From the NCBI RefSeq assembly GCF_963676685.1, contig NC_092351.1, forward strand, positions 36,208,001 to 36,272,000: a stretch of DNA of 64,000 nucleotides, read 5' to 3'. The position numbers and the translations under genes are program-made. Shown here piece by piece: positions 17,312 through 31,096 of the stretch. The DNA is from Mytilus edulis (lineage: Eukaryota). A model generated the notes under the pieces. The model saw only the letters and a program-made list of their open reading frames with translations, searched no databases and was not told the DNA's origin. How positions within the stretch are numbered: position 1 is the stretch's first letter; each line of letters opens with the position of its first letter.

Positions 17312-19256
17312 CAAGCATTTAATCTAACATTAATAGATATGATGTTTACCTTATAGCAGAAACGGTTTTTAATGTTACAAAATCCAACTCTATTATGAGA
17401 ACAATTGCTGAAAAGAGAAATGTGAAAAAATTGAGGTACATTTGTGACATATATATTTCTAGAAAGATTTGCTTAACTATTAATATGTGAAATACAATTT
17501 TACGAGTCATTTGATTAAAATTGTATGGAAACATTTCTAAATTTGGTGAGTGATTTGAGATATTTTCTAAGTGTCAGAATTATAATCATTACACTGGTTT
17601 TTAGGTAAAGATTTCATGAAATGCAATCAAAACCTTATGGGACTGACTTGATATCTAAATGTTCCAAGGCTGATCACTACCTTTTTTGATATACAAAATA
17701 TAGTGCATTGATCATAACACTTTATACATACTATCCATTAACATTTCACAAAATTTATCGATGTAATAAATGCTCCATTATTCAAGGCACAAAATGATGT
17801 TTCACTTGTCAAGAAAATTGCAAAACTTTTGCAAGGTGCAGGAATCTAATATCTTTTCTAAAAATATGAATTATGTCATTGTTAACCTCATCTTTAAAAT
17901 TGGAATTATCTTCCTTTGTCTAGAATAGCTGTTAAATGAGTAACAACCAATGCAATATTTAATTTTACTTCCCACTGATAAAGTGAAGCGATCTTTACCG
18001 TTCAGTGTCGTTTGATTAACATCATGGGACAGATCCAGTCATTTTTAAAGGGTGTTTTTTTTCGAACACAGGATAAAAGGGCTCCAACTGTGTCCCTATT
18101 CAAAAGCATTGATCATAAAAAGGGGAGGTTCCAACTTTGTCCAATCCCTGGATCCTCCACTGAGTACAATAAGAACGATACAGACTCTTTCAGAATGAGA
18201 AGTTCAGAATGAGAAGTCAAGAAAAGACAAAATACCATATTTTAAAAGTTAAAAAGAGCATATACATTTTGCAAAATATTTATATCTGTTTGATGAACCA
18301 CAGATGCAACGCAATGTCTCAGTTCGAAGACTGAACTCATATTTCCAAGCTGTATTCCATATGCTAGCAACTGCAACAAAACTCACCGAAAAGCTAAAAT
18401 ACGACAAAAATGGGTATGTCAACATCCACTCATAGCAATGTCTTAATGTCATTTAATAGATTACTTCGGTACTGGCATGAACATACTGATTTTTTGTGTT
18501 ATTAAAATTTGCTGTTACAAAATATTATAAATTATTATAAATAAAGGAATGTATCTCCCTCATGCAAAGCTCTGATTCCTTTCACAGATTTGGCTATACT
18601 TTTTGGACCTTTTGGATTATAGCTCTTCATCTTTTATATAAGCTTTGGATTTCAAATATTTTGGCCACGAGCATCACTGAAGAGACATGTATTGTCGAAA
18701 TGCGCATCATCTGGTGCAAGAAAATTGGTACCGTTAATTTTATTACAGTTGCAACAACAACAACAAGGTTTGAATGAATCATTAGTTTGTTAAAAATTTA
18801 TAACAAAACCAGATTAGAACAGATTGTCAGAATGTTTTAATTTTCTAACACAACCAGGCGAATGGCTAAACATACTATCAGCATAACGCAATGATCCTTT
18901 TGTGGTTTCCCTGATAGTTTTAACCTTTCAGGTTGTGATTGATGGATACATGCTGATGTCAGCATTTATTATGCAGCACGTATGCACGATCAGTAAAACA
19001 TTAGAAAGAAGTTTACTTAAACGACTTACTTTTATCCCTTCAAAATGTCCACTAAGTAGGTATAGCTTAGTTGATACAACTTTGCACTAGGAATACTATT
19101 TTCAATATACCTTGTTACAATGGGTTGACTACTGTCGTCAGCACAAATACCTTTTTTATGTGTTCTTTTGTGTTTGTTATAACAATTATTGATTCTTTGG
19201 AAACAGTAGGTAAATACGTTTTTCCCGAACCACCAATTGGTATTTTTTATATTTAA
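17312..19256 (+). pseudogene. Decayed paralogue of the peptidase-2/multipass-TM exon (23352-25174)
   Basis: Colinear blocks: LRYICDI (17432); SFD*NCMETFLNLVSDLRYF vs SSDESCMAFFVNLLAALRYF; AAAAATGGGTA..CATCCACT (~18406); SLIVLTFQVVIDGYMLMSAFIMQ vs SLIVLTYEAVKDDSVLMSAFIMQ; SLETVGKYVF..PIGIF vs SLRKVDEYLF..PISLF. Contains stops, frameshifts and a repeat insertion at ~18465-18745. Confidence 0.88.
18465..18745 (-). repeat. Interspersed repeat inserted in the pseudogene
   Basis: GTACTGGCATGAA...GAAATGCGCATC...GGTACCGTTAAT. Related copies at ~25805-26250 (opposite strand) and ~37580-37750. Confidence 0.7.
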
Positions 19257-21328: not shown

Positions 21329-21596
21329 AACAAGTATTGATTATAATAACTCAAAATATGATATGTATTTTTATCATATACATTTATAATAATAATAATA
21401 ATCTTATAAGCTAAAAAAAAAAGGAACAAAAATAACAATAAAAGACAGGAAAATCATTGTACTTCCCGCCCTCAAAAGTAATAATAGAGAAAAAGCAAAC
21501 CATTGATATCACAGTCCAGCGTGTTGGTGCATGCATCAAACAATTTATTTATAGAACACAGTCATTTGTATCTACATTTTCATTGGAAAATAAACC

Positions 21597-24500
21597 ATGG
21601 ATCAGGTAAATAACACTGAACATATTATAACATGTATTACTTGAATAATAAGACATAGCAGACAAAATATATTGATACTTCGAACATTTTAGAATATCGA
21701 TCATTATAATTTATTGTGATTTTAGCATGTTCATATAATGTTGTAAATATACAAGGGAAAATATGTTGATATTATGTACATCGATGACGCTGACATTACT
21801 GTAACAGTTGTGGTATATGCAATTATTGTTACAATATTATTAAATGATACAATGTCAAAGTATCAAAATTTGATTTTTTGGTTAAAAATAACTTAATTCA
21901 AAATATTCAAAGCCCTATAATCCAAACTATACAGTAGTTTTGGTTGATCGAGTTAAGTTTTAAAGTGAAATTTTGTATTGTAAACCTGACATTTGATACG
22001 TAAATATATATCATATAACCGTGTCGATATAATAATATGTGAATAAAATGAAACAGTATGTAGTGAGTAAACACAAAAACATCATGCATTACGTCTCTGA
22101 GATATTTCACTAATAAAAATTCAACAACATGAAAATGCATTTGTTAAAATATTTCTAGATAACTCAAACGACGGAAACAGTCAACAGCCTGACCAGTACA
22201 CCTAAAGCATGTCCTGATAATATCGCAAAGTTTTGGAAAAATACCACCGGAGACCTGCAGGCACTAGGTATGCATCTAGATGACCCCATTACAGTAACTT
22301 TTGGAATAAAAAAATTTCCGGTAATTGACACACAAATATCAAACCCTGTACAAGCAGCGGCCAATAATTTAGGTGGCGGTCACCATGCAGTGATTTTAAA
22401 ACTGGAAGATAAAGACAAGTGCGCTTTTAAACTTGAACTTATAGTTGACGAAGACGTATGTTCTGTTAAAAAGAACTTCAAATGTCTGAATGAGGAATGT
22501 AACTTTCAAACCTTCTTTTTTTCAAAACTGGCCAACCATCATTTTTTGGAACACGTCGGTCCAGAAGGAGAAAATATTCATTACGAGTGTTGTGGTCATG
22601 CATTTCGAAATTTTCAGTCTTACTGTCAGCATCAATATACAAATCATTCAACTAAAGGTGAAATACAATTAAAATTTGATCACATTCGGGAAAATAATTT
22701 TGAGAATTTTCTAGATCATGTTCAATATTTTGGAGCATACAAGAAAAGCACAACTTTAAGACAGGTGATGCAGTGTGCAGTTGACATTATTTTAAACTTT
22801 GGAAGATATTGGGTCTACTGTTGGAACTGTCAGGATTTTGCAACTTGGTTTCTTGTCCAAGTTGGAGTTCCTCTGAGAAATGTAGATCCTACATTAGCAG
22901 ACAAACTTACAGGATCTGGTACAAAAATTAATGCAAGGTCAATACAGCAAAGTAAGGAATCGTATTTATACAAAACACACAATGAACTTGAGATGCATGA
23001 TTTAACAGACTGGAAAGGAGGTACTATTTGCGGTGAAAGCGGATGTAAATTTTTACCACCCATGTCACTGGAAGCATTAATACGGCATACAAAGGTTGCA
23101 CACAATGACGACACTATATCAGGTTTGCAAGCCGTATAATACCATTTATTCTAGAACTATCAAGATAACAAAATTAAAATATATTCAATTAGAACTAAGT
23201 TTTTTTTTTTTAGAAATAATGATACATTCTGTTGCAACGTTATTCTTTTATAAAATAGATCTGTAGAATTTCTTTTATTGTGCAAACATGAATAAAAATC
23301 CGCTAAATTGAATATAATTAAAAATACGCCACATTGTACAAAATGTTTCAGGTTCATCAATGGATGATATGTTCGATGATTTCCTGTACACTGTGTCTGG
23401 GTGTCATATGGACATTAATTTAGATGTTAAATTAAAAAGAAAATATTCTCTCTATCAGCTCCGTGGTACGGATATATGCTCCCATACGTCGATTGTATTT
23501 AGTCCATGGACTTCAAGCATTGAATCTAACATTCACAAATACGATTTTTATCACACAGCGGAAATGGTAATAGATGGTACAAAACGCAAACCTCTGGTGA
23601 GACCAATAACTGAAGAACGCCATGTAGAAAACTTGAGGTACATTTGTGATATAGATATTTCGACGGAAGAACTCTTAGACTATATGAATGTGATTTACAA
23701 AATAACATTTAAATATTCATCAGATGAAAGTTGTATGGCATTTTTTGTGAACTTATTGGCTGCTTTGAGATACTTTCGTGAAAGGAAAATTGTAGTTTCA
23801 TCAGTTAACGAGGGTCTTTTGGCAGAATATGAAAATTACAGAAGACTGACAGACATTAAAAAACGACGAAATGCTTTATTAAAAATAATTGAATTTTTCT
23901 CACTGAATCAAGAGTTTCAAGGGGAGATACAAGTTTGGAAATCTTCCTTTATTTACGATTTTCCGAAATGCAGCACAAAAACGTCGTCCGAAAAGTTAAA
24001 AGTATATGCAAATGCTATAAAACATTTAACTGCAACAAAATTTAATGAAATGCAAAGATCAGGTAGAGAAAAATGGGTAAGTCTTCATCCACTGATATCA
24101 ATGTTTTTGATGTCATTCAATACGATAGGAGAGTTGTTTTTGCCAATGTATTTCGTTTTCACTGTACTTCTTATACTAAGCTTTGGATTACCGTTGCTAC
24201 CAAAAAAGGATATGAATGGATTAAAATTATGTTTACAGTATATAAGGCAACCTCACGAATGGCTAAACATACCTGCAATAGTACGTAATCTTATGTTTAT
24301 AATATCACTAATAGTTCTAACATACGAAGCTGTAAAAGATGACTCAGTGCTAATGTCAGCTTTCATTATGCAGTACTTATGGATAATTTGCATTACATTA
24401 GAAGAAGATATATATAAACGAGTTCTCACTTTCCATGAAATGACCCTTAAAAACGTCCCTAAGCGTATAGTTCAGTTGATACACCTTGGCATAAGGAACA

Positions 24501-25174
24501 ACCTTTTCAGATTCCCTGTTGCTGTTGTCTTAGTCATACCCTTATCATCTTGTCCGTATGTTATTTGCTGTCTTATTATTTTGATAATAATAATTTGTTC
24601 TTTAAGAAAAGTTGATGAATACCTTTTCACTGGGGGACTCCCAATTAGTCTTTTTACATGTCAATATGTAAGAATAATAAATCATTGCATTGTATTCCTA
24701 TATATGTTGGCAATCGCCAGCATTGGTATTCAAGGAGTCATTCGTATACCGGTTTTTCAAGTCTCAAATTATCACTGTTTTGCTATTTATATATACACAA
24801 GTTTATCATGGTATAGACCACAGAAAGATAACTTAATCATCTGTAGAAATATGGCCACTACCTATAATACTGCTGTTGAAAGAGATATCATAAAATCACA
24901 TGAAAAGGAATTGCTTAGTTCATGGTTATCAATTTTTCACTCATCAGTATTATTTTCAATGCTCACGCTCCATGCGATTTGTTTAGTACCAGTTATATGT
25001 GTATGCATTTTTGATGTACATATTTGTTTATGTATCACATTTATTACCCTTTATTTGCATTGTCTCTTGCTTTATTTCACTATTGACCTTCGATATGTTA
25101 TCAAAGAGCTTTTCAGTGGTCCGTTAGAAAAGTACATACTTCTCAATGAAACAGATAAAACTAAAATTCCCTAA
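21597..25174 (+). CDS. Uncharacterised ~931-aa protein: two tandem permuted papain-like (PPPDE/LRAT-like) domains, 3 C2H2 zinc fingers, multipass membrane region
   Basis: Model: exon 21597-21605 (ATG GAT CAG|GTAAAT), exon 22159-23122 (TTCTAG acceptor, open frame upstream of the 22270 ATG, phase-1 donor TCAG|GTTTGC), exon 23352-25174 (TTTCAG acceptor, phase 1, in frame with the 604-aa ORF). Total 2796 nt with no internal stop. Confidence 0.7.
22159..23139 (+). CDS. Permuted papain-like peptidase domain with C2H2 zinc fingers (exon 2; the 289-aa ORF extended upstream)
   Basis: GGHHAVIL (His 22381-86)...KLELIV (Glu 22435)...YWVYCWNCQDFATWFL (Cys 22828). Fingers: CLNEECNF..LANHHFLEH, CCGHAF..YCQHQYTNH, CGESGC..LIRHTKVAH. 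Confidence 0.85.
   Translation: MTQTTETVNSLTSTPKACPDNIAKFWKNTTGDLQALGMHLDDPITVTFGIKKFPVIDTQISNPVQAAANNLGGGHHAVILKLEDKDKCAFKLELIVDEDVCSVKKNFKCLNEECNFQTFFFSKLANHHFLEHVGPEGENIHYECCGHAFRNFQSYCQHQYTNHSTKGEIQLKFDHIRENNFENFLDHVQYFGAYKKSTTLRQVMQCAVDIILNFGRYWVYCWNCQDFATWFLVQVGVPLRNVDPTLADKLTGSGTKINARSIQQSKESYLYKTHNELEMHDLTDWKGGTICGESGCKFLPPMSLEALIRHTKVAHNDDTISGLQAV
23352..25174 (+). CDS. Second divergent permuted papain-like domain plus roughly 8-10 predicted TM helices (exon 3; the 604-aa ORF)
   Basis: ICSHTSIVF (His 23483)...HTAEMV (Glu 23561)...LRYICD...FKYSSDESCMAFFVNLL (Cys 23732), then long hydrophobic segments from about residue 243 to 575. A 1.8-kb open frame in AT-rich DNA. Confidence 0.85.
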
Positions 25175-28100
25175 CCCAGTGTATTGAAAAATCTTATTCC
25201 AGAAATTGAAATTGCAAGCAAGAAAATTTTTTATAAAGTTAATGGATGATGCAAGTTTAATAGTACGAATATGAATGAATAGCAAAGTCAGACCCTGAAA
25301 ATGATGAATTTTCATTCCATTTTGTTAAAATTTCTGTAACAACAGCCAAAAGTTTTCTATAAAAGATTCAATACTATTTTTATGATATTAGCATAACAAA
25401 TCTCATTAAATTACATTCGAACTATCTATTTAAAACATGTATGTATTTATCCTGTAAGGTGTATTTATACGATGTGAATGAAGCAGTTTTCAGAAAGAAA
25501 ACAAAATCAAGAATGACTGGATTGCTCAACACGTATTGTGAGTTTATATAATAAAGTATTAATCATTACGTGTTTTTTTATGAATGGTACATAATTTTGT
25601 GTAACACACATTTTTGCTAACTACTCGACATACAGTGATGCAAGACCTATATATATGTATAAACTTATGCACTGCTGAAGCCCGTGCAATTTCCCCGACA
25701 ATATTGAGCATAAACCTGAACGTGAGGCGTAAGCTACGATCTTAATAACCTTGACCCTTTTTTGAACTAGTTTTCAAGTATTGAAAGGATTGAGTAGACT
25801 AACATTAACGGTACTCATATTAATGCACCAGATGCGCATTTCAACACTTAATACCTCTTCCGTGATGCTCAAGAACCAAGTTCTTTTAAAAATCAAAGAA
25901 ATCGTAGATCAAAAAAAGAAGCTGTGGTATGATTGCTAATGAGAAAACTCTCCACAAGAGACCAAATGACAAAGAAATTAACAAGTGAAGGTCACTGAGC
26001 AAAGCACATACCGCGTAGTCAGCTACAAAAGGCCCCGAAATGACAAATGTAAACGCACATTACCAAAAAAGACAAAAATGTAAAGCCAAAGTCGGAAAAG
26101 AAATCAGAGCTTTGCATTAGGATGATATGTTCCTTCACTTTAAATAACTTCTAATCATATGTAACAGCAAATTTTAATATCAGAAAATCCGTATTTTCAT
26201 GCCAGTACCAAAGTACTGCCTCCTGTGCTGGTGATACCCTCGGGGACTAACATCAGAATACGTTTGTTATCAATAATATTTGTATATTAAATATGCGAAT
26301 CAAGCACAGCTATATATGTGCCATTTAATATTTCAGTGGCTCTCATATTTGATTTTTTAAGTTACCAAAAAAAACAAACATGTAGAGATAAACCATGATC
26401 TGCATTACCTTTTGAAACACCTGTGATCATCGCAGGTTTTTGTTGGGGTTCGTGTTGTTCATCATCTAGTTTTCTATGTTTATTGTTGATGGTCTTTTCG
26501 TATTTTTCTTTTTGTTGTTCATTGGATTGTCAGATTTTTTCGACTGATGAGTGTGAATGATTCTTTGGTATATTCTGCATCTCTTTCAGATGTCAGATAA
26601 CAACAAAGTAAATGATAAAACACTAGAAAAAGGCTAAAGTAGTTTACCAATGTTTTTATTGAAACCTTCAACCAGAAAAATAAATCTAGGTCACACACTG
26701 ACTGAGGGAATTGCATTACCTATAAAAGTACGAGACCATTTCCGTTGACAGGGTTAGTGTCTCCTCTTTTGTATGCACCCCACCATGCTTATACACACTC
26801 AGTAAAAATGACACAATCACGAATAGGACACAGCCAGCAAAATTACAAATCAGAAAGATACTGCGCTTGTGAGTTGATATGTGGTCGGAAACCGGAAAAT
26901 TTTTGAAGTGTCCATCTCCTCGTGGTGTGACGTTTTGTATCAGCATCACTTACACATGCTACGTGACAATTAAGTCTAAGTAGGGTAAACATGAAACAGA
27001 AGCGTATCAATTGAAATACATATACGCTATACGATAGTGCTGATGGAATGTCACTGTTGAAAAAATGAAAATAATTTATTAACAATAATATCGAACAATT
27101 CAAGAAACGGCAAGTCAATAAAACATTAAAGATTTAAAACACCGGACTACAACAGCCAACTGAACAGCTGAGACAAAATAAAATCCTTCATAAATGACCA
27201 TATTCTGGTTTTATTGCAGCTCAACTATTATATGTATTTATTTAACTTACATGTAAATACCATTGCAATACACATGTACTTATGTAATCTGGCACTATTC
27301 ATCTTTCAAATTATTACTGTCTTATATGAATAATTATAAAGATAAACTTGGCTAATATATAATTAATCCATAATTTCTTAAAAAAAACCAAACGTAAACT
27401 AGAAACATATAGAAATTGATAACAGTTTATAGGATAAGGCAATAGTAATATACCGCTGTTTAATAGTCATAGATAGAGTTAACTGAAACTAATTCGAGTC
27501 ACAAACCAAAAGTGAGAAATTACATTAACTATAAATCTTCTCAATTTCGAATGAGCTTTGTTGTTCAGATAATCTTGTTCTTTTTAACAATATAATTTCA
27601 CTAAAATAATGACATTAATGTTTATCCGATGTTTTATTATAATTTTGTAAACAAATACCAATATCCTGTTTATCTGCCTGAAGATTCCCTGAAATTCGGG
27701 TACTTATAAAACGCGGACCTTCATTGAGACATAATAAAATATGACACTAAAAAGAAAACATGCGTCAAAATCATATTAGTCGTAGATTATAGTTTGAAGT
27801 GTTTTGGCCTATGTGAGATTACTGAAATAGGGACAATTGAGTGAATAGATATCATAATCATAAATATATCAAAAAGAGAAATAAAAAACTTTGCATAATG
27901 TATCTCAAATCAAATCGGCAAGTAGTGGCGATCAAAGAATAACTTCTGTTTGTTGAAATATCAATCTACAAGACTTCACATCTATGCTGTTGATCAATTG
28001 ATTGATTGATTGTTGGTTGGTTGACGTCCAGTGTGTTGTTGATCAATAAGTCAAACATGTTGGCGGTGTCATGTTCGATGTATCAATGCGGATCAAGAAA

Positions 28101-29020: not shown

Positions 29021-31096
29021 TATTAAAAGTCTTAATTATTAAATCCTTTGTACTGTCCGTCATTGGATACGAAATTGAAATGAGAGGTATCCCGGATATA
29101 TACGAAAAACAAATAAATATTATTATATGGTCCTTTATATGGGATGGGAAAACAAACCAAGTCGCTAGAACAGTGTGCTGTTTACCGAAAGAAAAAGGGG
29201 GGATAGGAATGATAAACTTAAGGGACTTTATTAAATCAAAACAAGTGAAAAGTATGTACAGTATTGTCAACTCAAAAACACAAAAATGGAATGCAATAGG
29301 AAAATACTGGTTAACGTCACTAGACGAAAAATATGATACAGACTATTTTATATGTTCTTGTTCGGACACTACATGTTTTAAGCAAATACAAATGTCCAAA
29401 TATTATAAAGAACTTTTAATTTCCTGGACTGACTTACAGAAAATCCAAAAATCGGTCACGAAAGAGGACCTTTTAGAAGAAAATATTTTCGGCAATTGTA
29501 AATTGAAGTTCAAGGGACATGCATTATATTATGCAAATTTTGCCTCCAGTGGAATAAAAAAAATTAAAGATATATGGGACTTAAACAATAAATCCTTTAA
29601 AACATCCCTTGATATTTTTAACAGTCTTAAAGATAAAAGGAATTGGATTGCACAATATAGCCGCATTAAATCTTCGTTAACACCTCAACAAATTGACGTT
29701 TTAAAAACAGACTCTAGTATACATAGTAATTCTGATGGACCTATAAAATTAATAAATTCTTGTCAATTTATAAAAAATGGAGTTGTCGTTGATGCCAAAA
29801 AATTATGCCTTAAAAATATTAGATACTTTTATGAGAATAAAACAGCTCCAATTAGTCAGTTGAAGTGGAATTTACATTTTGGGAATGAACTACCATGGGA
29901 TTACATTTGGGAAACTTTGAATAAGAATTTAGCTAACAGGAAAATTAAACAATTTCAATGGAAGTTACTACATAATATAATTTACACTGAAGAAAAGTTA
30001 CAAAAAATGAATCGCTCAAACGGGAAGTGTCACTTTTGCAATGAAAAAGAATCACTATTTCATCTTTTTATTTATTGTAAACTGGTGGAAGACGTTTGGC
30101 GGGAAATTTTTGAGAAAATAAGGGAATTTTGTTACAAATTAAATATCCAAAAATTACAAAAATCGGAAACAAGTATAATTTTTGGGGTCATTAATGCAGA
30201 TGCATCTTATACCCAAATTTTAGATACGGTGCTTTTAATCACGAAATGGGTTATCTGGAAAACTAGAAATATCGCAAAATATCAAAAGAAAGGGATAAGT
30301 AAATTGGTGATTTTAAATATGATAAAACATGAAATGCAATTTCTGCTCAAATATTTTAAACCGAATACGAAAATCGAAGCCTTTTCTACTATGTGTGACA
30401 TTTTTTGTATATAAATATATATTTTGCATGGTCAGGTCAGTTCAATGACCTCTTTGATACTGATTGAATAATAATATGTACACTGCTCGCAACTCCCTAC
30501 ATGTAATTTCTGTTGTGTATATATTCATGTATATCATCTAATTGTAACAAGACATGTTGTATCAACAGGTTCATATTATAAACAAATATTTACTCACCAT
30601 ATCTTTGATATTAATCCTTATTGGGAATCAAAATCATTAATCCATTTTTTTTATGAATGAACTACACATCCCTTTAACAAATCGCACGTGGTAAATGATT
30701 ACTCGACCAGAAATTTAATGTAATCGAAATTAACATAGCAAAAGACTTGATGTACGATAAAATTGAAACTGCTTAATAAATACAGGTAGCCTTTGTGAGA
30801 AATAAATGAAGATAAAAAACAAACTTTATTCAAATAATTATATATGGTGAGATGTATAGATATATAGATCGATATTGATTGCAGGTACATGTACATTTGT
30901 ACAAGGATAGATAATATTTATAAAGGTTGATGTTAATAATTTATAGTGGGAGTTTTTTTCTCATTTGCTTTTCCCCGACAAATGAGACTGTAAAAAATGG
31001 GGCCCCTTTAGTTGCTTCCCTGGGCAACTGAGGGTTGATGTAACAGGTGATTGTTAATAAAATATGTTTAATATTAAAAAAAAAAAAAAAAAAAAA
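29021..31096 (+). mobile_element. 5'-truncated L1/Tx1-clade non-LTR retrotransposon
   Basis: TSD AATATCATACAAACG (29006-29020 and 31097-31111), poly(A) tail at ~31076-31098, ~660-bp 3' UTR, ORF2 C-terminus open up to the truncation point. Confidence 0.93.
29080..30414 (+). CDS. LINE ORF2 C-terminal part (post-RT region plus zf-RVT zinc knuckle)
   Basis: FIWDGK...LPKEKGGIGMINL, FQWKLLHNII, CHFCNEKESLFHLFIYC, IWKTRN: standard L1/Tx1 ORF2 C-terminal motifs. Confidence 0.92.
   Translation: MRGIPDIYEKQINIIIWSFIWDGKTNQVARTVCCLPKEKGGIGMINLRDFIKSKQVKSMYSIVNSKTQKWNAIGKYWLTSLDEKYDTDYFICSCSDTTCFKQIQMSKYYKELLISWTDLQKIQKSVTKEDLLEENIFGNCKLKFKGHALYYANFASSGIKKIKDIWDLNNKSFKTSLDIFNSLKDKRNWIAQYSRIKSSLTPQQIDVLKTDSSIHSNSDGPIKLINSCQFIKNGVVVDAKKLCLKNIRYFYENKTAPISQLKWNLHFGNELPWDYIWETLNKNLANRKIKQFQWKLLHNIIYTEEKLQKMNRSNGKCHFCNEKESLFHLFIYCKLVEDVWREIFEKIREFCYKLNIQKLQKSETSIIFGVINADASYTQILDTVLLITKWVIWKTRNIAKYQKKGISKLVILNMIKHEMQFLLKYFKPNTKIEAFSTMCDIFCI

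What the first reader, a model, noticed from the sequence alone, without database searches (positions are those of the whole stretch)
21597..25174. Candidate new membrane-anchored tandem thiol hydrolase: two permuted papain-like domains + C2H2 fingers + multipass TM
Seen: the two large ORFs join through a 229-bp phase-1 GT-AG intron (23123-23351) and start from a 9-nt MDQ exon, giving ~931 aa. Domain 1 has H-H-A-V...E...Y-x5-N-C-Q-D-F. Domain 2 repeats the layout: H-T-S-I-V...E...Y-x5-C-x2-F, and the decayed paralogue has N-C at this position. Established: His-before-Cys order with an NCxxF motif defines circularly permuted NlpC/P60 enzymes (PPPDE/DeSI deSUMOylases and deubiquitinases, LRAT/PLAAT acyltransferases). 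Inference: I know no described protein combining two such domains with zinc fingers and an ~8-10-helix membrane module. It could be a sensor-protease/lipase-membrane effector. Large exons and rapid paralogue turnover would fit an immune or stress function.
Basis: partly seen in the sequence, partly recalled or inferred. Interest (0 to 1): 0.88.

Follow-up and report, generated by a model that had tools for sequence, protein, structure and literature searches.

The report
Membrane-anchored LRAT-like thiol enzyme gene
This is a real, spliced and expressed mussel gene for a 931-residue membrane protein whose first domain is a rearranged papain-type (LRAT/PPPDE-like) cysteine enzyme interrupted by zinc fingers; the family is uncharacterised, but it is a new variant of a known enzyme superfamily rather than a new kind of protein.

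Summary
The gene model is confirmed. Transcript contigs join 21605|22159 and 23122|23352 at GT..AG introns. GenBank already holds the same 931-aa architecture as an unnamed "hypothetical" Mytilus protein. The window is Mytilus edulis.

- **Zinc fingers.** Two C2H2-type fingers sit in the beta3-beta4 loop, the loop that sets substrate choice in LRAT. A third finger follows.
- **Domain 2** keeps His369, Glu395 and Cys452 in the same order of secondary structure, with the Cys at a helix N-terminus. Its fold could not be tested alone and its sequence links are not significant, so "tandem" is plausible but unproven.
- **Membrane module.** Eight to ten helices follow, with no known family.

The genome holds over 80 LRAT-domain hits, several tandem or fused to multipass membrane regions, so those two traits are not unique here. 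The immune role is unsupported. The likeliest function is cytosol-facing lipid acyl transfer or hydrolysis.

The parts
21597..21605 (+). Exon 1 coding part (Met-Asp-Gln); transcript contig starts at or before 21561
   Evidence: Sequence. Spliced contig X3 record 15 covers 21561-21603 joined to 22157-22530, GT..AG with cut +2. P0001 and P0041 start with MDQ.
21606..22158 (+). Intron 1 (553 bp, GT..AG, phase 0)
   Evidence: Joint 'skips 553' in X3, with zero depth across it in X1 and X3.
22159..23122 (+). Exon 2: cytosolic N-terminal region, holding domain 1 with two inserted zinc fingers plus a third finger
   Evidence: Open frame. 100% match to M. edulis isoform P0041. Single copy in the genome.
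22285..22896 (+). Domain 1: circularly permuted NlpC/P60 (LRAT/PPPDE-like) core, exon-2 residues ~43-246
22381..22383 (+). Candidate catalytic His (exon-2 residue 75; His78 of the full protein)
   Evidence: Invariant in 7 of 7 homologues. Lies at the start of strand 77-82 in the model. Aligns to the HHA(I/V) His of LRAT domains.
22435..22437 (+). Conserved Glu (exon-2 residue 93; Glu96), candidate third polar residue
   Evidence: Invariant and in strand 89-96. An acidic third residue is known in permuted members such as BcPPNE, whose triad is Cys154/His49/Glu64 (PMC3142127).
22483..22554 (+). Zinc finger 1 (C-x4-C-x12-H-x4-H), inserted in the beta3-beta4 loop
22588..22647 (+). Zinc finger 2, variant with adjacent Cys-Cys (CC-x12-H-x4-H)
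   Evidence: C144, C145, C156, H158 and H163 are invariant. The model shows a hairpin at 142-149 and a helix at 152-162.
22825..22839 (+). N-C-Q-D-F motif with the candidate nucleophile Cys (codon 22828-22830; Cys227 of the full protein)
   Evidence: All five residues are invariant. The Cys sits at the N-terminus of helix 224-234. It aligns to NCEHF of LRAT domains.
23029..23103 (+). Zinc finger 3 (C-x4-C-x13-H-x4-H here; C-x2-C in pearl oyster)
   Evidence: C291, H310 and H315 are invariant. Helix 304-314 in the model.
23123..23351 (+). Intron 2 (229 bp, GT..AG, phase 1), partly retained in transcripts
   Evidence: Joint 'skips 229' in X2 and X3. Intron-spanning contigs occur at lower depth (X1 records 1-2, X2 record 12, X3 record 17). 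The annotated intron-retaining isoform P0041 ends ...TISGLQAV.
23352..25174 (+). Exon 3: domain 2, a helical linker and the multipass membrane module, with the stop codon
   Evidence: Open frame. 98% identical to P0001. Transcript contigs cover it fully and run on past 25339.
23411..23788 (+). Domain 2: His...Glu...Cys alpha/beta domain (exon-3 residues ~20-145), possibly a second divergent permuted NlpC/P60 domain. His codon 23483, Glu codon 23561, Cys codon 23732
   Evidence: H44, S46, P51 and E70 are invariant in 18 of 18; C127 in 16 of 18, the two exceptions being truncated fragments. The model has strands 28-37, 45-51, 69-73, 80-83 and 95-103, then helices 104-121 and 127-142 with the Cys at the helix start. 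hhalign to domain 1 is collinear but only P 0.03-0.07.
24071..25093 (+). Multipass membrane module, about 8-10 helices (exon-3 residues ~240-580)
   Evidence: Hydropathy segments at 256-285, 303-350, 385-425, 439-470 and 527-579. AF2 helices. P246, E325, Q340, W343, R386 and H474 are conserved across bivalve homologues. No Pfam or PDB sequence match.
17314..19247 (+). Decayed tandem paralogue: fragments of domain 2 and the membrane module with stops and frame breaks
   Evidence: tblastn fragments are 50-63% identical to P0002 and 41-55% to P0001. In-frame stops are present and N-C is kept at the Cys motif.

Best explanation
A functional three-exon Mytilus edulis gene encodes a 931-residue polytopic membrane protein. 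The roughly 560-residue N-terminal part has no signal peptide and carries zinc fingers, so it should face the cytosol.

Its first domain is a circularly permuted NlpC/P60 thiol enzyme of the LRAT/PPPDE/YiiX type. Cys227, at a helix N-terminus in an invariant N-C-Q-D-F motif, would be activated by His78, with Glu96 as a likely orienting residue. It would form an acyl-thioester intermediate that is then hydrolysed or passed to an acceptor.

Two C2H2-type fingers fill the beta3-beta4 loop. In LRAT this loop decides the acyl acceptor, so here the fingers are inferred to shape substrate or partner choice. A third finger links to a second His369/Glu395/Cys452 domain that probably repeats the fold. 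Eight to ten helices hold both domains at a membrane.

Permuted NlpC/P60 enzymes are mostly lipid-directed, and this one is welded to a large membrane module. The most likely activity is therefore phospholipid acyl transfer or phospholipase A-type hydrolysis at the cytosolic leaflet.

Shown: the gene model, expression, purifying selection, the fold of domain 1, and conservation of the candidate catalytic residues. Inferred: topology, chemistry, the lipid substrate, and the fold of domain 2.
For: Gene model and expression:
- Splice joints lie at the predicted sites.
- An independent 931-aa annotation, P0001, has the same architecture.
- Differences among Mytilus transcripts are 18 synonymous to 19 non-synonymous against 79% non-synonymous expected.

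Fold of domain 1:
- AF2 model with pTM 0.60.
- The permuted nature of these chains is stated in PMC10318531, PMC3142127, PMC12994826, and in the abstract of PMC9012467 for CLN5.

Sequence links of domain 1:
- Pfam LRAT E 0.008-0.011 in 4 of 7 members.
- With the finger insert removed, hhalign to Mytilus LRAT domains gives P 7e-5, probability 63%, 106 columns, His to His and NC to NC.

Conservation and membrane context:
- H, E and NCQDF are invariant between Mytilus, Pinctada, an unnamed ENA organism and Limulus at 33-41% identity.
- No hydrophobic N-terminus, and 8-10 C-terminal helices.
- The finger insert lies in the same beta3-beta4 loop as the LRAT-specific sequence needed for acyl transfer to retinol (PMC5133064).
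- Permuted members are described as lipid-specific (PMC12994826).
Against: - The model is of middling confidence (mean pLDDT 62), and the loop just before the Cys (residues 215-222) is below 50.
- The Pfam LRAT score of 16.5 bits is under the 24.3-bit cut-off.
- The best structural match is a deSUMOylase, not a lipid enzyme.
- The second His of the PLAAT Cys-His-His triad is replaced by Val or Ile.
- His-Cys proximity could not be measured.
- Domain 2 has no significant link to any family.
- The membrane module has no recognisable family, so its role as an anchor rather than an active part is assumed.
- No biochemical data exist.
Confidence: 0.6

Rival explanations
1. It is a membrane-tethered isopeptidase. 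Domain 1, and perhaps domain 2, would work like DeSI/PPPDE enzymes and remove ubiquitin, SUMO or a similar modifier from proteins at a membrane, with the zinc fingers recognising the modifier or the substrate.
Against: Pfam PPPDE (PF05903) gives no hit to this protein, whereas LRAT does. The profile comparison favours LRAT-type domains of the same genome. DeSI-1, TseH and CLN5 are within about 1 Z unit of each other, so the fold search does not separate the subfamilies. Fusion to a large membrane module suits a lipid substrate better.
Confidence: 0.17
2. There is a single catalytic domain only. Domain 2 would be an unrelated alpha/beta domain whose conserved His, Glu and Cys serve another role, such as metal binding, regulation or contact with the membrane module. 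The protein would then not be a 'tandem' thiol enzyme. This rival concerns architecture and is compatible with the chemistry proposed for domain 1.
For: No Pfam, PDB-sequence or Atlas link for domain 2. hhalign to LRAT profiles and to domain 1 gives P 0.03-0.3. Mytilus copies lack the Asn before the Cys (S/T-C). Fold searches on the whole exon-3 model were swamped by helical matches.
Against: The order and placement match domain 1 element by element: His at the start of the second strand, Glu in the third strand, and Cys at the N-terminus of the second helix after a long helix. The hhalign alignment is collinear and pairs His with His and Cys with Cys. Non-Mytilus members read N-C-V-E/A-F. Second, degenerate LRAT-like domains are common in this genome.
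Confidence: 0.4
3. It is a pseudoenzyme or scaffold. The papain-like domains would no longer catalyse anything, and the protein would act through its zinc fingers and membrane module, for example as a receptor, channel subunit or regulator, as in the catalytically inactive LRAT-domain proteins of vertebrates.
Against: His78, Cys227 and the whole NCQDF motif are invariant across phyla, as are His369 and Cys452. Dead domains usually lose exactly these residues. LRAT mutagenesis suggests the third residue may not be essential (PMC3142127).
Confidence: 0.1

Closest known systems
LRAT / PLAAT (HRASLS) family, Pfam PF04970
   Same: Permuted order: the His strand first and N-C-x-x-F at a helix start last. 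An HHA(V/I) box resembles the LRAT-type domains of the same genome. Both are membrane attached. The extra sequence sits in the beta3-beta4 loop, where LRAT has its specificity insert.
   Different: The score is below the Pfam cut-off. The second His of the Cys-His-His triad is Val or Ile. The loop insert is two zinc fingers of about 60 residues in place of a hairpin. There are 8-10 membrane helices in place of one C-terminal anchor, plus a second His/Glu/Cys domain and a third finger.
PPPDE / DeSI (peptidase C97; DeSI-1, PDB 2wp7)
   Different: No PF05903 sequence hit. DeSI proteins are small and soluble, and have no fingers or membrane helices.
YaeF/YiiX-like permuted enzymes and TseH (PDB 3kw0, 2if6, 6v98)
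   Different: These are bacterial, soluble or secreted, single-domain proteins with no detectable sequence similarity.
CLN5 (PDB 6r99)
   Different: By my recollection it is a lysosomal lumenal glycoprotein with a different surrounding architecture (not checked here). There is no sequence similarity.
Multi-LRAT-domain and LRAT-plus-multipass-membrane open frames of the same Mytilus genome (e.g. L005, L006, L007, L012-L014)
   Same: Large single exons. Two or more LRAT-like domains in one protein, or an LRAT domain followed by several membrane helices.
   Different: Those domains pass the Pfam cut-off, their second domains have lost the Cys (NDSSHF), and they lack zinc fingers. There is no alignable similarity to domain 2 or to the membrane module here. 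They too are uncharacterised.
TMEM222
   Same: PMC10318531 lists it among human NlpC/P60-like (cluster II) proteins, as a transmembrane protein of unknown function.
   Different: Not compared by sequence or structure here. By my recollection it has only a few helices, no zinc fingers and a single domain.

Membership tests
Circularly permuted NlpC/P60 superfamily (domain 1) | Papain-like alpha+beta fold with the Cys helix after the His-bearing sheet | tested here: met
   [not shown]
Circularly permuted NlpC/P60 superfamily (domain 1) | Conserved His, polar third residue and Cys, in that order | tested here: met
   H75, E93 and C224 (exon-2 numbering) are invariant in 7 of 7 sequences from three or more lineages.
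Circularly permuted NlpC/P60 superfamily (domain 1) | His and Cys side chains adjacent in space | not testable with these tools
   Model coordinates are not exposed to scripts. Only secondary-structure placement could be read.
LRAT family, Pfam PF04970 (domain 1) | Score at or above the curated cut-off of 24.3 bits | tested here: not met
   16.5 bits, E 0.011. The best E among family members is 0.0083. The locus is not among the 82 genome hits to PF04970.
LRAT family, Pfam PF04970 (domain 1) | H-box and NCEHF-type motif alignable over the whole domain | tested here: met
   hhalign with the finger insert removed gives 106 columns, P 7e-5, probability 63%, His to His and NC to NC.
PLAAT/HRASLS subfamily | Cys-His-His triad (second His about 12 residues after the first) | tested here: not met
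   The position aligned to the LELVH His is Val or Ile in all members.
PPPDE / peptidase C97, Pfam PF05903 | Profile match | tested here: not met
   No PF05903 hit at E up to 10 for any of 7 members. There is structural similarity only.
Permuted NlpC/P60 (domain 2) | Fold match to a known member | tested here: inconclusive
   Only the 606-residue model could be searched, and helical matches filled the lists. The order of secondary structure fits.
Permuted NlpC/P60 (domain 2) | Significant profile similarity to domain 1 or to LRAT domains | tested here: not met
   P 0.03-0.3, although the alignment is collinear.
Permuted NlpC/P60 (domain 2) | Conserved His...polar...Cys | tested here: met
   H44 and E70 in 18 of 18. 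C127 in 16 of 18, the two exceptions being truncated fragments.
Classical C2H2 zinc finger | C-x2-4-C-x12-H-x3-5-H with a beta-hairpin plus helix | tested here: met
   [not shown]

The most novel reading that the evidence does not exclude
The family is a previously unrecognised two-headed thiol acyl-enzyme built into its own polytopic membrane machine. Two active permuted NlpC/P60 domains, one gated by zinc fingers in the specificity loop, would work together with a new 8-10-helix module carrying a conserved intramembrane Glu and His. Acyl transfer would then be coupled to lipid handling or transport across or within the membrane. The family would be old (molluscs and chelicerates) but lost in most animals.
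Probability: 0.2. Interest if true: 0.7.

Novelty: new variant of a known kind. Interest (0 to 1): 0.42.

Why it matters
Permuted NlpC/P60 enzymes (LRAT, PLAATs, DeSI, CLN5, bacterial toxins) perform important lipid and protein-modifier chemistry. Which activity a given member has is largely decided by what is attached to the core.

This family shows an unusual solution. Zinc fingers are inserted into the loop that sets acceptor specificity in LRAT. A probable second catalytic head is present. The whole is fused to a large membrane domain of no known family.

The family is conserved between bivalves and a horseshoe crab, yet carries no name, Pfam domain or publication. It also points to a large, unexplored expansion of LRAT-type genes in mussels. 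The practical value is modest until an activity is measured. It adds a defined, testable family rather than overturning anything.

Tried and rejected
- **Foldseek on both models.** Searches against PDB and against BFVD gave nothing with E below 0.1.
- **Sequence searches of PDB.** Phmmer and profile searches gave nothing meaningful for either exon.
- **ESM Atlas.** No usable hit for exon 2. For exon-3 residues 1-180 the scores were 0.79, at chance level.
- **Representative-library profile search.** The A1 profile kept only 418 positions, mostly domain 2, so domain 1 was poorly covered. It still found the distant members P0009-P0014.
- **Viral origin.** Two scans of viral contigs found no relative.
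- **Further copies in the genome.** Only the gene itself and the decayed neighbour were found. The same search with alignment A5 failed on the server.
- **Raw RNA run X22.** It laid no reads, so it is no test.
- **Secondary structure in hhalign.** Adding it did not make the domain 1 to domain 2 comparison significant.
- The joined spliced protein was never typed or searched as such. The exons were searched by reference, and the database protein P0001 served as the full-length proxy.
Full report
**What the window is.** The sequence is AT-rich (about 31% G+C). The product of exon 2 plus the retained-intron tail is identical to a RefSeq Mytilus edulis protein, P0041, "uncharacterized protein isoform X3". 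The window is G000:C8:36208001-36272000 of a 1.37-Gb assembly.

**Check of the observation.**
- The sequence shows ATG GAT CAG | GT at 21597-21607 and AG | ATA ACT at 22157-22164.
- Exon 2 ends ...TCA G | GT at 23122/23123, and AG | GT TCA TCA ATG follows at 23350-23362.
- The two long open frames are 22159-23122 (continuing to a stop at 23139 if unspliced) and 23352-25174.
- Transcript-like contigs from several studies were laid on 21400-25400. One contig of X3 joins 21603 to 22157 ("skips 553, GT..AG, cut +2"), i.e. 21605|22159. Contigs of X2 and X3 join 23118 to 23348 ("skips 229, GT..AG, cut +4"), i.e. 23122|23352.
- Depth is zero over intron 1 in X1 and X3. Depth over intron 2 is lower than over the exons (2.3-6.8 against 7-30).
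- The runs are only guessed to be RNA, but spliced GT..AG joints at exactly the predicted sites are hard to explain otherwise.
- The raw RNA run X22 laid nothing and is no test.
- The joined product is 931 aa. GenBank holds a 931-aa "hypothetical predicted protein" of M. galloprovincialis (P0001) that is 98% identical over exon 3 and has the same junctions.
- I did not type or search the joined model. Exons were searched by reference and P0001 served as the full-length proxy.
- Among 37 listed differences between the window and the Mytilus transcripts, 18 are synonymous and 19 are not. About 79% of random changes would be non-synonymous. That is roughly four standard deviations of purifying selection by simple arithmetic, although 13 differences were not listed.

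**Family and distribution.**
- The gene is single-copy in this genome apart from a broken neighbour.
- Close relatives occur in M. galloprovincialis, M. coruscus (three models on one contig), M. californianus and Logan assemblies. They include a second paralogue lineage at about 61% identity.
- The broken copy at 17314-19247 is nearer to that second lineage (50-63% against 41-55%). It has stops and frame breaks and still reads N-C at the domain-2 Cys.
- A profile search of 1.84 billion representatives and two word-indexed searches found only a handful of distant members. These are a full-length 868-aa protein of the pearl oyster Pinctada imbricata (26% identity overall), several unnamed ENA/NCBI proteins with domain 2 plus the membrane part, an ENA domain-1 protein on the same contig as one of these, and a 340-aa domain-1 isoform of Limulus polyphemus.
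- Domain 1 of Mytilus is 39-41% identical to the ENA and Limulus proteins and 33% to Pinctada.
- None of these proteins has a name or a Pfam domain.
- Two scans of viral contigs found no relative.

**Domain 1.**
- Pfam gives only a sub-threshold LRAT hit (E 0.011, 16.5 bits against a 24.3-bit cut-off). It recurs in 4 of 7 family members.
- The AF2 model built on a 7-sequence alignment is of middling quality (pLDDT 62, pTM 0.60). It shows strands at 43-51, 77-82 and 89-96, then two beta-beta-alpha units at 106-164. Next come strands 169-176 and 196-199, helix 200-216 and helix 224-234.
- His75 precedes the second strand, Glu93 lies in the third, and Cys224 opens the last helix.
- Foldseek found nothing significant.
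- The Foldseek-independent VIA-align scan of 48,161 PDB representatives gave a coherent answer:
- Published classifications list these chains as the circularly permuted branch of NlpC/P60 (PMC10318531; PMC3142127; TseH in PMC12994826). CLN5 is described as having a region homologous to the N1pC/P60 catalytic domain (PMC9012467 abstract).
- At sequence level, with the finger insert removed, the family profile aligns over 106 columns to a profile of LRAT domains taken from this same genome (P 7e-5, probability 63%). HHAV pairs with HHAI and NCQDF with NCEHF.
- His, Glu and all five NCQDF residues are invariant in every homologue.
- The second His of the PLAAT Cys-His-His triad is Val or Ile here. 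A Cys/His/Glu triad is documented in BcPPNE, and the third residue may be dispensable in LRAT.

**Zinc fingers.**
- Finger 1 (C109-x4-C114-x12-H127-x4-H132) and finger 3 (C291...H310-x4-H315) have classical spacing.
- Finger 2 has adjacent Cys144-Cys145, then F-x2-F and H158-x4-H163.
- All ligands are invariant.
- Fingers 1 and 2 lie between strands 89-96 and 169-176, that is, in the beta3-beta4 loop. In LRAT the family-specific sequence in that loop is indispensable for acyl transfer to retinol (PMC5133064). That the fingers shape substrate or partner choice is an inference.

**Domain 2.**
- Exon-3 residues ~20-145 hold His44, Ser46, Pro51 and Glu70, which are invariant in 18 of 18 sequences. 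Cys127 is present in 16 of 18, and the two exceptions are truncated fragments. Non-Mytilus members read N-C-V-E/A-F.
- The model (pLDDT 50-80 in this region) has strands 28-37, 45-51, 69-73, 80-83 and 95-103, then helices 104-121 and 127-142.
- This is the same order as domain 1, with His, Glu and Cys on the corresponding elements.
- hhalign pairs His with His and Cys with Cys, but at P 0.03-0.07 even with secondary structure added. Comparisons with LRAT profiles give P 0.03-0.3.
- Pfam, PDB sequences and the ESM Atlas gave nothing.
Its fold searches were filled by helical matches.
- I put the chance that domain 2 is a second permuted NlpC/P60 domain at about 0.55-0.6.

**Membrane module.**
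- Hydropathy and the model agree on about 8-10 helices between exon-3 residues ~240 and 580.
- Residues conserved across bivalve homologues include Pro246, Glu325 (invariant, within a helix), Gln340, Trp343, Arg386 and His474.
- Exon 2 has no hydrophobic segment. With three zinc fingers, the N-terminal half is most simply cytosolic. This is inferred.

**Context in the genome.**
- PF04970 finds 82 matches in this genome, many in large single open frames.
- Of ten open frames fetched, five carry two scored LRAT stretches. One 1,398-aa frame has a chain of LRAT-like repeats.
- Four frames have an LRAT domain followed by several hydrophobic helices.
- Their second domains have typically replaced the Cys (NDSSHF).
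- Tandem LRAT-type domains and LRAT-plus-multipass fusions are therefore common in mussels, though undescribed. The only four papers in the library that mention both LRAT and Mytilus are on unrelated topics.
- What is particular to this family is the combination. It has fingers inside the catalytic domain, a Cys-retaining second domain, and its own membrane module. None of these aligns to the other LRAT genes.

**Mechanism and rivals.**
- The best-supported reading is a cytosol-facing, membrane-anchored thiol acyl-enzyme. Cys227 (full-length numbering), activated by His78, forms a thioester that is hydrolysed or transferred.
- I favour a lipid substrate. Sequence affinity is to LRAT-type domains, the permuted branch is described as lipid-directed, and the enzyme is fused to a large membrane domain.
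- A pseudoenzyme is unlikely given the invariant His and Cys.
- An immune or stress role was not tested by anything here.

**Verdict.** This is an unnamed family and a new architectural variant within the permuted NlpC/P60 superfamily. It is of moderate interest until an activity is measured.

Noticed in passing
window 23123-23351 (intron 2) and 23123-23139: Intron 2 is retained in part of the transcripts, at contig depths 2.3-6.8 against 7-30 on the exons. Read-through ends after five codons and gives a soluble 329-aa protein with domain 1 and three fingers. That protein is annotated as isoform X3 in M. edulis. Limulus also has an annotated domain-1-only isoform of 340 aa. A soluble form may be a regular product.
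   Followed up: partly
G000, e.g. C1:86520731-86571602, C8:17242887-17366999, C10:13716500-13722500 (L005-L014): There is a large expansion of LRAT-domain genes in the mussel genome, with 82 PF04970 matches. Many are single large exons with two or more LRAT-like domains, including a 1,398-aa frame with a chain of them. Others have an LRAT domain followed by multipass membrane regions. Second domains usually read NDSSHF in place of NCEHF.
   Followed up: partly
window 29080-30414 (+): A 444-aa open frame has a zf-RVT domain (E 1.3e-9). It is the tail of a non-LTR retrotransposon reverse transcriptase, about 4 kb downstream of the gene.
   Followed up: partly
P0044 (Limulus) and P0043 (unnamed ENA organism) against P0009 (Pinctada): Domain 1 of the mussel protein is more similar to the horseshoe-crab and ENA proteins (39-41%) than to the pearl-oyster one (33%). 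The family was found in very few animals. The cause could be a patchy ancient gene, unequal rates or transfer, and this was not resolved.
   Followed up: no
[not shown]
   Followed up: no
M. coruscus proteins P0003, P0004, P0007 (one 181,818-bp contig): Three gene models of this family lie on one contig in M. coruscus, representing at least two paralogue lineages. In the M. edulis window, the second lineage survives only as the broken copy at 17314-19247. This points to gain and loss of tandem copies among mussel species.
   Followed up: partly
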